From Pavona decussata (Eukaryota): DNA of 64,000 nucleotides. Made by a program: the position numbers and the translations under genes. Below, piece by piece: positions 12,228 through 15,200 of the stretch; position 1 is the first letter of the stretch; every line of letters starts with the position of its first letter. The DNA is taken from positions 310,001 to 374,000 of the forward strand of contig CDRNST010000093.1 in NCBI GenBank assembly GCA_977016875.1, read 5' to 3'. The notes beneath the pieces were generated by a model. That model made no database searches. It saw nothing but the letters and a program-made list of their open reading frames with translations, and was not told the origin of the DNA.

Positions 12228-15200
12228 ATGGCCTCTTCAGCAGCATCCTCCACAGAGCAGCGTCGGTGGTTGGTTGTGGGGATTGCTCTTCACCATGTTC
12301 TAACTCCATGCCTCAGAGAGAAAATTAAGAACGAAATGACACCGTTCTACCAACATGTGGTGCGAAACTTTGGATTGGACAAACAGACGTTTGCTACTCA
12401 GAAGAAAACCATTCCACCATCAACAATAAACTTGAACTACGGAAGCATTAACAATAATGCTGCAACTTATCGGCATCCACGTTACTACGACTACTGTGTA
12501 AAGGACGAAGTTTCATTGGCTAAGCTCTTTATGAAACCTTTTATGGCGCAGTTCAATGCGTTTGACCATTCCTTCGACTCTTCAGCAGCTCTGGCTGTTC
12601 TGTGTGGAGCATTGCCCTTCACGTCTGTCAAACGATTGGCTGAGGACGTGAGGTCCAAAGTCCGTAACAAATGGGCACATTGCGACTTCACAGACTGGAC
12701 GGAAGCGTATTACGATGACTGCTTTGATCTCATGGAGGCCCTAGTCGTGAACCTGAAAGTGGAACCTTCTGATGAAGTGAGAATTCTGGGTGAACTCAAA
12801 TTGTGGAGGAATCAGGGTAAGTCAGGGGGGCCTGGGGGCAAATGTGTAAATCAATAAAACCAGTAAAGTGAGCAACTTGTTAAGGAAGGTTAGTGTGCGA
12901 AGTTGAGATAGTTTTTCTACATAATTTAACTTTGTTTCCTGCCTGGAGTATTGTACATGTCTCTTCGGAAGTCCATAATAAAGTTGCACTAGCCTAATCT
13001 GCTAGGGGAGATGTCTGCTGTGGCACTCCCACTACCCTCGCCCTTTTTGGGTGAAACAAAGGCCACAAAAGGCATTTGCTCTCGAAGGTTAGTGCTTGCC
13101 GCGAAGACACGCATTACATCATTTGCGACTCTGTTTGCTCAATTATTGAAATCTTTCGTAGGAGCGACTATGTGAAGCCACAATTCCACGAAGATTAAGT
13201 AAACGTATAATTGTAGCTTAAATTTGCCTTCCTACTCATTTTTCCAGGGCTCGAGATATGCCTTGGAAAGCCGCTTGACGACACTCTTCTCCAAGACATG
13301 AGTAGGAAAATTCAACAACTTTCTGACTCTTTGGATGGTCACAAAGAGCTACATGACAACATTCACGTTACTCTTGGCTCGCTCAAGACTGAGTTCGAGA
13401 ACTCTATAGTCGAACTTCAAGAAAAACAGTCTATTCTGGAAAAGGCTTGTGAAGGGCTAAAGATCAACCAAGACATGATAAGAGAAGAGATGAGTTTTAA
13501 AGACAAGGAACGTGAGATTCAGTGCCGGGAAATAACAGAGAAAGTGCAAAGCCTGTGTAAAACCCTGGAAACCAAAAGTTTGCCTATGCAGAGAAATTTG
13601 GATGTGCTGATGACAAGAGTAAATAACATGTCTCCTTCAGATGATTTCAGTCAGGTTGTATTTGATGCTCCAGACCAAAGCAAGTGGTTTACAGGTAGAG
13701 AAAAAGAAGCCAAAAGCCTTGAAAGATGCCTCCCGTTTGGAGAAAGCAAAGGATTGAGAATGGCAGCCATCTGCGGTCTTGGAGGATGTGGAAAGACTAC
13801 CTTAGCGGTTCAGTTCGCATGGAAATATAAACACAAATACGAGGGAGGTGTATTTTGGATTTCCATGGAAGACGACACAAAGTTTGAAAACTCCATAACT
13901 GACCTAGCCTTGCATTTGGAAATTCAAGCAAATTCGTTCGATATGACGCTTTCAAAGGTTTTAACATGGATCTCTAAACAGCAGAGGCCCTGGTTGCTAG
14001 TTCTTGATGATGTCGACCAACAACACCTCTCTGAACAAATGCACAAGGTGTTGTGTGGTCGGTGGAAAAGGCAGGCTTGCGGCCACATCCTTCTAACAAC
14101 AAGACGTGAACCAAAAGAGGTCTGTGAGTCTATCAACTTGGAGCCATCTTGTTGTCTTGAAGTTTCTACCTTCCCCGAAGAGGATGCAAGAAGATTTCTT
14201 GTTACCCGGTGTGATGTCAATGATTCAAAAGTACAAAAGGCTGCTTTGGATGATCTTATCAGTGAGCTTGGCTGTCTCCCTCTAGCCCTAGAACAGGCCG
14301 GCGCCCATATTAAAGCTCTTCAGTGCTCCATCAGTACCTACCTTGAGGAGTACAAAAGTCAGCGATTAAATTTGTTGAGCCAGCACCCACGGGCAAAACC
14401 ACTTTGGGAATACGAGTCTAAACACCGCTTGGCAGTGCACACCACGTGGCTTTTAAACTTTGAGTACGTCCGAAAATCACCTCATGGGGAAATTGCATCC
14501 CGTTTTGTCCAAGCTGCTGCGTTTCTGGCGCCGAATGAAATCCAAGAAGAGCTAATCAACGTTCGATTGCTCTCCGATGACGACCCGTCTAGTCAAAATT
14601 ATGATCTTCCTCTGACAAGAAACCACATCATAGAAACTTTAACTAAGTTTTCACTTTTTCACAGAAAGAGCCCCAGATCCCTTGGATTGCACCGTCTGGT
14701 TCAGGAGGTAGTTCGAGACAGAATGACCTTTGAAGAAACCGCCTCGTCATTAATTAGATCAGTGCGAATTGTTCATCAATCTTTCAACGATTGCCCATCG
14801 CCAGACCAATTCCTTACGGATATCATACCGAGTGTACCAGAACAGCCATCCGCATTGGTCGTCAACCCTTCTCAGTTGTACATGTGGTCCAAGTTAACTA
14901 GTCATGCCTCTGAGCTACAGCATCATTTGAGGAAGTGGTTGGATCAGCAAGGCATCAAACGGGAAGATAAAACAGCCGTTTTAACTCGCGAGGCATCTCG
15001 TATTGTGCATGAAAATGCCATCCAATTAAGCGTCCATGGCCATCAAGAGGATGCCAAGGAATCCGAACGATTTGCATTTCAAATTTTGGATTCATGTCCA
15101 AGTGACGGTAAAGTCCTTGCCCTGGAGGATATCGGAAAGCTTTTTCCTCACACTTTACCTCTTTCTCAAAAGTTGCAGAAAACTGTGCTGTACTCATCTC

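What the first reader, a model, noticed from the sequence alone, without database searches (positions are those of the whole stretch)
12228..12816. Intact HEPN catalytic motif R-N-x-W-A-H in all four copies, on its own 589-nt coding exon
Seen: RNKWAH in copies 1 and 2 and RNEWAH in copies 3 and 4 (R146..H151 in copy 1). The coding part of the exon is exactly 589 nt in every copy. The only coding intron (phase 1) falls exactly between the effector and the coiled coil, and the remaining ~4.1 kb is a single exon. Inference: an active nuclease module joined to an intronless NB-ARC-sensor cassette by exon shuffling. Read-through of the donor hits a stop within 9-42 codons, so intron retention would yield a stand-alone HEPN isoform.
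Basis: partly seen in the sequence, partly recalled or inferred. Interest (0 to 1): 0.72.

Follow-up and report, generated by a model that had tools for sequence, protein, structure and literature searches.

The report
Coral NB-ARC receptor genes with HEPN head
Four neighbouring coral genes for NLR-like immune-type receptors each start with a separate exon encoding a conserved, probably RNA-cutting HEPN domain; the reading is right, but this design has been known in corals since 2013 and its activity has never been tested.

Summary
All four tandem copies have a 589-nt first coding exon carrying R-N-[K/E]-W-A-H (R146..H151), then a phase-1 GT-AG intron, then one ~4.1-kb exon encoding linker, NB-ARC, DUF7779, TPR, beta-helix and zf-MYND. 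Copy 3's large exon is broken by a 1,034-bp retroelement fragment.

The N-terminal domain is very probably a HEPN domain. A pLDDT 95 model puts the motif at the end of helix 3, as in canonical HEPN. Solved HEPN domains, Swt1 first, are enriched among the structural matches. Relatives fall within a bit of the Pfam cut-offs for HEPN_Swt1 and DUF4559 (CXorf38). The motif is kept in 49 of 52 diverse relatives.

It is a third coral HEPN family, separate from the DZIP3-like one. It has at least 58 exon copies in this genome, all with the same phase-1 boundary, in front of NB-ARC, NACHT-LRR and NPHP3_N-WD40 cassettes.

The whole architecture recurs in an octocoral and a clam, so the fusion is ancient. 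Recent exchange among the four copies breaks inside exon 1, not at the intron. There is no evidence for an intron-retaining isoform.

Nuclease activity is inferred, not shown. The scan met HEPN-NLR genes before on other DNA of this genome. Verdict: a new member of a known kind.

The parts
12228..12816 (+). Copy 1, first coding exon (589 nt): HEPN-like domain, residues 1-196 plus the first base of codon 197. RNKWAH lies at nt 12663-12680.
12817..13247 (+). Copy 1, phase-1 intron (431 nt), GTAAGT...pyrimidine tract-AG
   Evidence: skipped by the intron-less relative L046
13248..17353 (+). Copy 1, single large exon: helical linker, NB-ARC (Walker A GLGGCGKTT, Walker B LLVLDDVD), DUF7779, TPR, right-handed beta-helix, zf-MYND, stop
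26371..26959 (+). Copy 2, HEPN exon (589 nt), RNKWAH
26960..27395 (+). Copy 2, phase-1 intron (436 nt)
27396..31498 (+). Copy 2, large exon, same architecture as copy 1
36545..37133 (+). Copy 3, HEPN exon (589 nt), RNEWAH
37134..38256 (+). Copy 3, phase-1 intron (1,123 nt)
38257..43485 (+). Copy 3, large exon, broken in the beta-helix region by the insertion at 41071-42104; premature stop at 41133-41135
41071..42104 (+). 5'-truncated non-LTR retroelement fragment (RVT_1 C-terminal part plus DUF6451, (TAAG)n tail). It is flanked by the 14-bp duplication AAAGTTCATACAGT at 41057-41070 and 42105-42118.
50848..51436 (+). Copy 4, HEPN exon (589 nt), RNEWAH
51437..52636 (+). Copy 4, phase-1 intron (1,200 nt)
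52637..56793 (+). Copy 4, large exon, same architecture
10229..12808 (+). Block shared at 85.6% identity with 48817-51428 upstream of and inside copy 4. A 5' flank plus most of exon 1 has been homogenised between the two sub-lineages, and identity collapses in the last ~170 nt of exon 1.

Best explanation
These are four tandem paralogues, three intact and one broken by a retroelement, of an old and uncharacterised metazoan STAND (NLR-like) receptor family.

The first coding exon encodes a HEPN domain of the Swt1/CXorf38 clade. It is a helical bundle with a long, conserved insert between helices 2 and 3, and the catalytic-type motif R146-N147-x-W-A-H151 sits at the end of helix 3.

The second exon encodes a helical linker, an APAF-1-type NB-ARC switch with its winged-helix part (DUF7779), three TPRs, a right-handed beta-helix and a MYND zinc finger.

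The most likely working model is inferred, not shown. A ligand or a protein state sensed by the TPR/beta-helix/MYND part releases the NB-ARC switch. The receptor then oligomerises, and the N-terminal HEPN domains are brought together in pairs. This completes the composite, metal-independent RNase site that HEPN dimers form, as in RNase L after 2-5A binding. The nuclease would then cut viral or host RNA, causing translational arrest or cell death.

What is shown here: the gene structure, the domain content, the HEPN-like fold and motif, purifying selection, and the family's size and range. What is inferred: dimerisation, RNase activity, the trigger and an immune role.

Rough odds: HEPN fold and homology about 0.9, catalytically active RNase about 0.6, activation by receptor oligomerisation about 0.5.
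For: Gene model; an intron-less relative aligns across the junction.

Domains of exon 2: NB-ARC 53.9 bits (cut-off 23.5), DUF7779 38.4, Beta_helix 73.9, zf-MYND 35.9, plus TPR.

HEPN evidence:
(i) In the model built on 52 sequences (pLDDT 95.4, pTM 0.89), helix 129-150 ends in the motif and is followed by a loop and helix 159-176. This is the position described for HEPN in PMC3710099.
(iii) Pfam: HEPN_Swt1 matches 20 of 30 homologues. A paralogue reaches 27.4 bits against a cut-off of 27.5. DUF4559 (the CXorf38 family) reaches 26.2 against 27 over nearly the whole domain.
(iv) R146, N147 and H151 are invariant in 22 sequences down to 34% identity, and R and H are kept in 49 of 52 wider relatives. 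All 30 genomic paralogues inspected read RN[EKA]W[AGP]H.
(v) dN/dS is 0.14-0.43 in exon 1 overall, and 0.14-0.28 in its old, unconverted part, which holds the motif, across dS 0.7-1.0.
(vi) The Atlas shape search finds mollusc clusters at TM 0.87-0.90, some of whose members carry HEPN_DZIP3 or DUF4559.

Context: HEPN heads on cnidarian NACHT/NB-ARC receptors are documented in PMC3710099, PMC8260672 and PMC10236652.
Against: - No curated HEPN model reaches its cut-off on the window's own copies (best 14.8 bits, E 0.035).
- Foldseek against the PDB gives nothing significant, and sequence profiles find no solved relative.
- The usual upstream acidic residue of HEPN (Ex3[KR] in helix 2) is not evident. 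The invariant acids D113 and D117 lie in the insert.
- No dimer model could be made, no activity data exist for any member, and no RNA evidence from this species shows the spliced mRNA.
- Some HEPN domains (Swt1, sacsin, DZIP3) are reported as non-catalytic or as RNA or nucleotide binders.
Confidence: 0.58

Rival explanations
1. The domain has the HEPN fold but is not a nuclease. It would act as an RNA- or nucleotide-binding module or as a homotypic adaptor, so the receptor signals through partners rather than cutting RNA itself.
For: The closest structural and HMM relative, Swt1 HEPN, is listed as inactive in PMC3710099. The coral paper PMC10236652 calls DZIP3-like HEPN 'RNA-binding'. A canonical helix-2 acidic residue is not evident. 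A few family members have lost the motif yet persist, for example the mussel protein fused to PARP14-type RRM domains (P0345, SSKWPR).
Against: R, N and H are kept in 49 of 52 relatives at 30-50% identity and in all 30 paralogues inspected in this genome. In PMC3710099 that pattern is taken as the mark of the active families, and inactive families lose it.
Confidence: 0.25
2. It is not a HEPN domain at all. It would be a lineage-specific helical bundle whose R-x4-H is conserved for structural or other reasons, and the HEPN matches would be generic four-helix-bundle noise.
Against: Two independent HEPN-clade Pfam models come within a bit of their cut-offs in close relatives, and DUF4559 does so over the whole domain. 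The motif lies at exactly the canonical structural position, with the canonical polar residue after R. About ten HEPN structures in the top 50 of 48,161 chains is a strong enrichment. The family shows the fusion partners described for CXorf38-type HEPN.
Confidence: 0.07
3. The HEPN exon is also used alone. Intron retention, or a separate short gene, would give a free ~210-aa HEPN protein, for example as a regulator or decoy of the full-length receptor.
For: Read-through stops follow within 8-41 codons in the four copies. A 229-aa RefSeq model consisting of this domain only exists in Exaiptasia (P0397). This lead was not checked.
Against: Stop distances of 5-82 codons across 30 loci are what random sequence of ~40% G+C gives (about 16 codons on average by my calculation), so they carry no signal. 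RNA-library contigs covered only 12276-12595, none reached the donor or the intron, and there were no joints. The ~200-aa database 'proteins' are ORF calls that run on into the intron and stop there.
Confidence: 0.1

Closest known systems
CXorf38-family HEPN domain (Pfam DUF4559, PF15112), defined in Anantharaman et al. 2013 (PMC3710099)
   Same: The motif is of the R-N-E-x-x-H type with four residues between R and H. It sits at the N-terminus of NACHT, ankyrin and DEATH architectures in cnidarians and amphioxus. It has a long insert between helices 2 and 3. DUF4559 aligns to homologues over residues 8-176 at 26.2 bits against a cut-off of 27.
   Different: It stays below the curated cut-off. 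The window copies give no DUF4559 hit. The nine true DUF4559 loci of this genome lie elsewhere. The insert has one cysteine, so the Zn ribbon described for CXorf38 is absent. Here the partner is NB-ARC/TPR/beta-helix/MYND.
Swt1-like HEPN (Pfam PF18731; PDB 4pqz)
   Different: Swt1's HEPN is fused to a PIN nuclease and is listed as inactive. The family here keeps R, N and H, has a ~60-residue conserved insert, and heads STAND receptors.
DZIP3/hRUL138-like HEPN heads of coral NLRs (PF18738; PMC8260672, PMC10236652)
   Same: An N-terminal HEPN on its own exon in front of NACHT-LRR, NACHT-WD40 or NB-ARC-TPR receptors, hugely expanded in tandem arrays. This genome has at least 114 matches.
   Different: It is a different family. 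There is no PF18738 hit at E<=10 on our copies, and hhalign gives only E 0.09. The DZIP3-like copies of this genome that I aligned (eight loci on two contigs) read R-N-T-V-[YF]-[AG]-H, with five residues between R and H. Their loci are separate. In PMC10236652 the orthogroup with our architecture (OG0000334: NB-ARC, TPR, beta-helix, zinc finger) is tagged 'noneDetectedN'.
RNase L (ankyrin sensor, pseudokinase, KEN/HEPN RNase)
   Same: This is the working analogy: ligand binding to a repeat sensor drives self-association, which completes a HEPN dimer active site and unleashes RNA cleavage (PMC3710099).
   Different: There is no STAND NTPase in RNase L, no homology outside the HEPN fold, and the activation is shown experimentally for RNase L only.
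APAF-1 / plant NB-ARC receptors and bacterial STAND (Avs-type) receptors with N-terminal nuclease effectors
   Same: They share an NB-ARC switch with Walker A and B motifs and a winged-helix part, a C-terminal repeat sensor and an N-terminal effector that acts on oligomerisation. Bacterial HEPN-STAND fusions are noted in PMC3710099.
   Different: The effector here is HEPN rather than CARD, TIR, CC or Mrr/Cap4. The sensor combines TPR, beta-helix and MYND, which has no characterised counterpart.

Membership tests
HEPN superfamily | Rx4-6H motif with a polar residue (N/D/H) right after R | tested here: met
   R146-N147-K/E-W-A-H151 in all four copies. RN[EKA]W[AGP]H in 30 of 30 paralogues. R and H kept in 49 of 52 relatives. 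Definition from PMC3710099.
HEPN superfamily | Motif at the C-terminal end of helix 3 and the start of the loop to helix 4 of a helical bundle | tested here: met
   AlphaFold2 model, pLDDT 95.4: helix 129-150, loop 151-158, helix 159-176. Definition.
HEPN superfamily | [quoted passage not shown] | tested here: met
   Residues ~49-117 form a mostly non-helical, highly conserved insert with pLDDT above 94.
HEPN superfamily | Structural similarity to solved HEPN domains, standing above unrelated folds | tested here: inconclusive
HEPN superfamily | Second conserved acidic residue upstream (Ex3[KR], helix 2) near the active site | tested here: inconclusive
   No conserved Ex3[KR]. The invariant D113 and D117 lie in the insert, 29-33 residues before R146. 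Their distance to H151 could not be measured because no model coordinates were available.
HEPN superfamily | Homodimer forming a composite site; metal-independent RNase activity | not testable with these tools
   Only single chains can be predicted, and there is no biochemistry.
Pfam HEPN_Swt1 (PF18731) | Score at or above the gathering cut-off (27.5 bits) | tested here: not met
   Window copies score 14.8 and 12.9 bits. The best paralogue scores 27.4 bits.
CXorf38 family (Pfam DUF4559, PF15112) | Score at or above the gathering cut-off (27 bits) | tested here: not met
   No hit on the window copies. The best homologue scores 26.2 bits over residues 8-176. The true DUF4559 loci of the genome are elsewhere.
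CXorf38 family (Pfam DUF4559, PF15112) | Zn ribbon inserted into the HEPN domain (PMC3710099) | tested here: not met
   The insert of the window copies holds a single cysteine, C90, and no CxxC pairs.
DZIP3/hRUL138-like HEPN (PF18738) | Match to the family model | tested here: not met
   No hit at E<=10. None of the genome's 114 PF18738 matches lies at our loci. hhalign E 0.09.
NB-ARC (APAF-1/R-protein type STAND NTPase) | Pfam NB-ARC above its cut-off, with Walker A GxxGxGKT and Walker B hhhhDD | tested here: met
   53.9 bits against 23.5. GLGGCGKTT and LLVLDDVD are present in all four copies.
Animal NLR in the strict sense (NACHT + LRR) | NACHT as the best NTPase match, and C-terminal leucine-rich repeats | tested here: not met
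   NACHT scores 34 bits but NB-ARC scores higher. There are no LRRs; the sensor is TPR, beta-helix and MYND. It is NLR-like by logic, not by membership.

The most novel reading that the evidence does not exclude
This HEPN family has no Pfam model of its own. It counts 591 clusters at 50% identity, in cnidarians, bivalves and amphioxus. It may be the missing effector of a large share of invertebrate NLR-type receptors that published surveys list as having no detectable N-terminal domain. If so, HEPN/NB-ARC/TPR/beta-helix/MYND would be an ancient metazoan, apoptosome-like sensor that executes its response by cutting RNA itself. That would be the first animal STAND receptor with an intrinsic nuclease effector, paralleling bacterial Avs systems and RNase L.
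Probability: 0.35. Interest if true: 0.65.

Novelty: new member of a known kind. Interest (0 to 1): 0.4.

Why it matters
HEPN heads on cnidarian NACHT and NB-ARC receptors were predicted in 2013 and counted in coral genomes in 2021 and 2023. The principle is therefore not new, and the scan has already met it elsewhere in this genome.

What this locus adds is narrower. It gives an effector assignment to a conserved receptor orthogroup (NB-ARC/TPR/beta-helix/zinc finger) that the coral literature lists as 'noneDetectedN'. It also shows that a third HEPN family exists beside the DZIP3-like and CXorf38 families. That family escapes Pfam, has at least 58 exon copies in this genome, and keeps one phase-1 exon boundary in front of several NTPase types.

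The three intact copies give a compact, well-defined construct (residues 1-196) for a test that has not been reported for any of these animal HEPN-headed receptors, as far as the papers and earlier notes consulted here show: does forced pairing of the HEPN head cut RNA?

Tried and rejected
- Pfam at default and lax thresholds on the four exon-1 translations gave only HEPN_Swt1, at E 0.035 and 0.14.
- Profiles of the family against PDB sequences gave nothing, or one chance hit to a viral polyprotein at E 1.
- Foldseek against the PDB with both models gave nothing at E<=0.001; Csm6 appeared at E about 1.
- The first AlphaFold2 run, on 30 close homologues, left the insert at pLDDT below 50. A wider 52-sequence alignment fixed this.
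- hhalign against this genome's DZIP3-like HEPN exons aligned motif to motif, but only at E 0.09, with a shallow template. I therefore do not file the domain under DZIP3-like.
- RNA evidence: contigs of three RNA libraries lay only on 12276-12595, at 95-99% likeness. They showed no joints and nothing on the intron or exon 2. The fourth run covers everything and is probably DNA. This gives no direct proof of splicing or of intron retention in this species.
- I considered a recent exon shuffle at the intron. I rejected it for this cluster because the homogenised tract runs from about 2 kb upstream to about codon 120 and ends inside exon 1.
- The ~200-aa database 'proteins' are not stand-alone genes. 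They are ORF calls that run on past the end of the domain and stop, as read-through into an intron would.
- The spliced protein was never assembled. Exons were searched separately by reference, and the full-length architecture was judged on natural full-length homologues (P0127, P0129, P0231, P0281).
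Full report
WHAT IS THERE. The window is part of a 602-Mb coral assembly (contig C93). Its closest database relatives are scleractinian sequences such as Oculina, Montipora and Stylophora. It holds four head-to-tail copies of one gene on the + strand.

Each copy begins with an ATG-initiated coding exon of exactly 589 nt: 12228-12816, 26371-26959, 36545-37133 and 50848-51436. Each exon ends G|GTAAGT or G|GTATG(A/G). A pyrimidine tract and AG in the matching phase open the second exon at 13248, 27396, 38257 and 52637. 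The intron is therefore phase 1 and is 431, 436, 1,123 or 1,200 nt long. The motif is RNKWAH in copies 1 and 2 and RNEWAH in copies 3 and 4, running from R146 to H151.

SUPPORT FOR THE GENE MODEL. A 5,124-nt contig from a related coral (L046, 76-79% nucleotide identity) carries one open frame running from an N-terminus homologous to copy 1's through the MYND finger. It aligns to the window as two abutting blocks, 12251-12817 and 13243-17366. It thus lacks exactly the predicted intron and shows no further interruption of the 4.1-kb exon. I take it for a transcript, which is an inference. RefSeq models from Oculina patagonica (1,578 aa) and the octocoral Dendronephthya gigantea (1,484 aa) read through the same junction.

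Reads from this species did not help. Contigs from three RNA libraries lay only on 12276-12595, with mismatches, and showed no joints. The fourth run covers everything and is probably DNA.

COPY 3 IS BROKEN. Its second exon is interrupted at 41071-42104 by a 5'-truncated reverse-transcriptase element (RVT_1 plus DUF6451, (TAAG)n tail). The element is flanked by a 14-bp target duplication, and a stop follows at 41133-41135. 'Intact in all four copies' is therefore true of the motif, not of the gene.

THE SECOND EXON. Pfam finds NB-ARC (53.9 bits), DUF7779, TPR, Beta_helix/NosD and zf-MYND. Walker A (GLGGCGKTT) and Walker B (LLVLDDVD) are present in all copies. This is an APAF-1-type STAND protein, not a NACHT-LRR protein.

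IS EXON 1 A HEPN DOMAIN? No Pfam model passes its cut-off on the window copies; the only hit is HEPN_Swt1 at E 0.035 over the motif helix. Four lines of evidence nevertheless converge.

(1) Among 30 coral homologues, 20 hit HEPN_Swt1 and 13 hit DUF4559, the Pfam model of the CXorf38 family, which PMC3710099 defines as a HEPN family of the Swt1 clade. The best scores are 27.4 against 27.5 bits and 26.2 against 27 bits. The DUF4559 match covers residues 8-176.

(2) An AlphaFold2 model on a 52-sequence alignment reaches pLDDT 95.4. Helix 129-150 ends in the motif and is followed by a loop and helix 159-176. A ~60-residue insert precedes helix 118-127. PMC3710099 describes exactly this: the motif at the end of helix 3, an insert between helices 2 and 3, and a polar residue after R.

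(4) R146, N147 and H151 are invariant across 22 sequences down to 34% identity, and R and H are kept in 49 of 52 wider relatives. The three exceptions include a mussel protein fused to PARP14-type RRM domains, so the motif can be lost and is not a structural necessity.

Selection agrees with this. dN/dS in exon 1 is 0.14-0.43. In the old, unconverted part that holds the motif it is 0.14-0.28 across dS 0.7-1.0. I put HEPN homology at about 0.9.

WHICH HEPN FAMILY? It is not the DZIP3-like family that coral papers count. PF18738 gives no hit here, while the same genome has at least 114 strong PF18738 matches (up to 214 bits) at other loci. The eight of those I aligned read R-N-T-V-[YF]-[AG]-H, with five residues between R and H, and hhalign between the two families gives only E 0.09. 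The nine true DUF4559 loci also lie elsewhere, and our insert lacks the Zn ribbon described for CXorf38. So this is a third family, nearest to CXorf38/Swt1, without a Pfam model of its own.

A profile search of 1.84 billion representatives finds 591 clusters at E<=0.001, of which 433 are at E<=1e-10. Named members come from stony corals, sea anemones, an octocoral, mussels, a clam and amphioxus. All are 'uncharacterized', or are misnamed STI1-like because of the TPRs.

THE EXON AS A MODULE. This genome has at least 58 matches to the exon. In all 30 loci inspected, the match ends three residues after the invariant W193 with G|GT, the same phase-1 boundary. Downstream lie three kinds of cassette, each with a phase-1 acceptor:
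- NB-ARC/DUF7779/beta-helix, with TPR and MYND matches in some loci;
- NACHT-LRR;
- NPHP3_N-type NTPase with WD40.

In one NACHT locus the coiled coil is a separate exon with phase 1 at both ends. In other animals the same domain heads nSTAND3-ankyrin and NACHT-LRR proteins, and follows ROC-COR.

Two results temper the 'exon shuffling' reading for this locus. First, the complete architecture (HEPN head found by the profile search; STAND part, TPR, beta-helix and MYND by Pfam) is conserved in an octocoral and in the clam Mya arenaria, so the joint is ancient. Second, among the four copies the recently exchanged tract is not the exon. Copy 1 and copy 4 share 85.6% identity from about 2 kb upstream to the end of exon 1 (the match ends at 12808), but identity falls from 93-98% to about 70% within the last 170 nt of the exon. 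dS is 0.09 for codons 1-120 against 0.96 for codons 121-196, and about 0.9-2.3 (saturated in the beta-helix) in exon 2. That is gene conversion or unequal crossing-over between tandem paralogues, with a breakpoint inside the HEPN domain.

THE ISOFORM IDEA. Stops 8-41 codons past the donor are unremarkable. Across 30 loci the distance is 5-82 codons, and sequence of about 40% G+C gives a stop every ~16 codons by my calculation. The ~200-aa database 'proteins' are ORF calls that run on into the intron. One 229-aa RefSeq model in Exaiptasia is a lead that I did not follow.

HOW IT PROBABLY WORKS (inferred). The sensor part (TPR, beta-helix, MYND) detects a ligand or a protein state. The NB-ARC switch then drives oligomerisation, and the N-terminal HEPN domains pair and form the composite, metal-independent RNase site. 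RNA cleavage stops translation or kills the cell. This is the logic of RNase L and of bacterial STAND-nuclease systems. PMC3710099 proposed it for HEPN-NACHT proteins.

WHAT IS KNOWN, AND NOVELTY. PMC8260672 reports DZIP3-like HEPN as the commonest partner of NACHT in many cnidarians. PMC10236652 lists DZIP3-like HEPN/NB-ARC/TPR genes in Acropora. It also lists an orthogroup, OG0000334, with NB-ARC, TPR, beta-helix and zinc finger, 1,383-1,606 aa long, whose N-terminus is tagged 'noneDetectedN'. By its domain content that orthogroup matches our gene family. The new element is the assignment of a HEPN head to it, together with the recognition of a Pfam-invisible HEPN family.

Earlier notes of this scan on other DNA of the same genome reached the same general verdict for HEPN-NACHT and HEPN-STAND-TPR genes. 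I rate it a new member of a known kind, of moderate interest.

Noticed in passing
window 10229-12808 against 48817-51428; exon 1 codons 1-120 against 121-196: Mosaic history inside exon 1. The 5' flank and the first ~120 codons are homogenised between the copy 1/2 and copy 3/4 lineages (dS 0.09-0.27). The rest of exon 1 and all of exon 2 are old (dS 0.7 to over 2). This is gene conversion or unequal crossing-over with a breakpoint inside the HEPN domain.
   Followed up: yes
window 41057-42118: A 1,034-bp 5'-truncated non-LTR retroelement fragment (RVT_1/DUF6451 ORF at 41165-42094, (TAAG)n tail) with a 14-bp target-site duplication interrupts copy 3. It looks like a young insertion.
   Followed up: yes
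window 44022-44991 and 57526-57598: Extra fragments resembling the 3' part of the receptor gene (beta-helix to C-terminus) lie downstream of copy 3 and copy 4. They are probably remnants of further partial duplications.
   Followed up: no
G000 contigs C104, C273, C129, C219, C66 and others: The genome holds at least 114 strong matches to HEPN_DZIP3 (PF18738) in tandem arrays, and 9 to DUF4559. Together with the ~58 copies of the family studied here, that makes three separate HEPN families in one coral genome.
   Followed up: partly
G000:C28:1337305-1419544 (e.g. L045): A subfamily with the same NB-ARC/TPR/beta-helix/MYND exon has its HEPN domain split into two exons (query residues 7-111 and 108-194), that is, an extra intron inside the domain.
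   Followed up: no
L038 (G000:C215:1695900-1705899), 1482-2465: In a NACHT-LRR paralogue the coiled coil is a separate exon with phase 1 at both ends. It contains tandem repeats with units such as KVEQLEQGLTAMTDKVQH and KVEKLEQGVTTRTDKVQH.
   Followed up: partly
P0271 and P0279 (Exaiptasia, Actinia); P0345 (Mytilus coruscus): In sea anemones the same HEPN family occurs at the C-terminus of ROC-COR proteins, one of them with CAP-Gly. In a mussel it occurs with the motif lost (SSKWPR), behind PARP14-type RRM domains.
   Followed up: partly
window 12-1100: A 362-aa ORF at the window's edge with no Pfam hit at E<=1e-4. By eye it looks like the end of a retroelement polyprotein with a GIY-YIG-like stretch. 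This is unverified.
   Followed up: no
window 62071-62970: An ORF with BTB_2 and a KCTD8/12/16 H1 domain (E 8e-49). It is an unrelated KCTD-type gene next to the cluster.
   Followed up: partly
window ~3020-3390 and ~23100-23270: Runs of N (gap or masked) inside the window.
   Followed up: no
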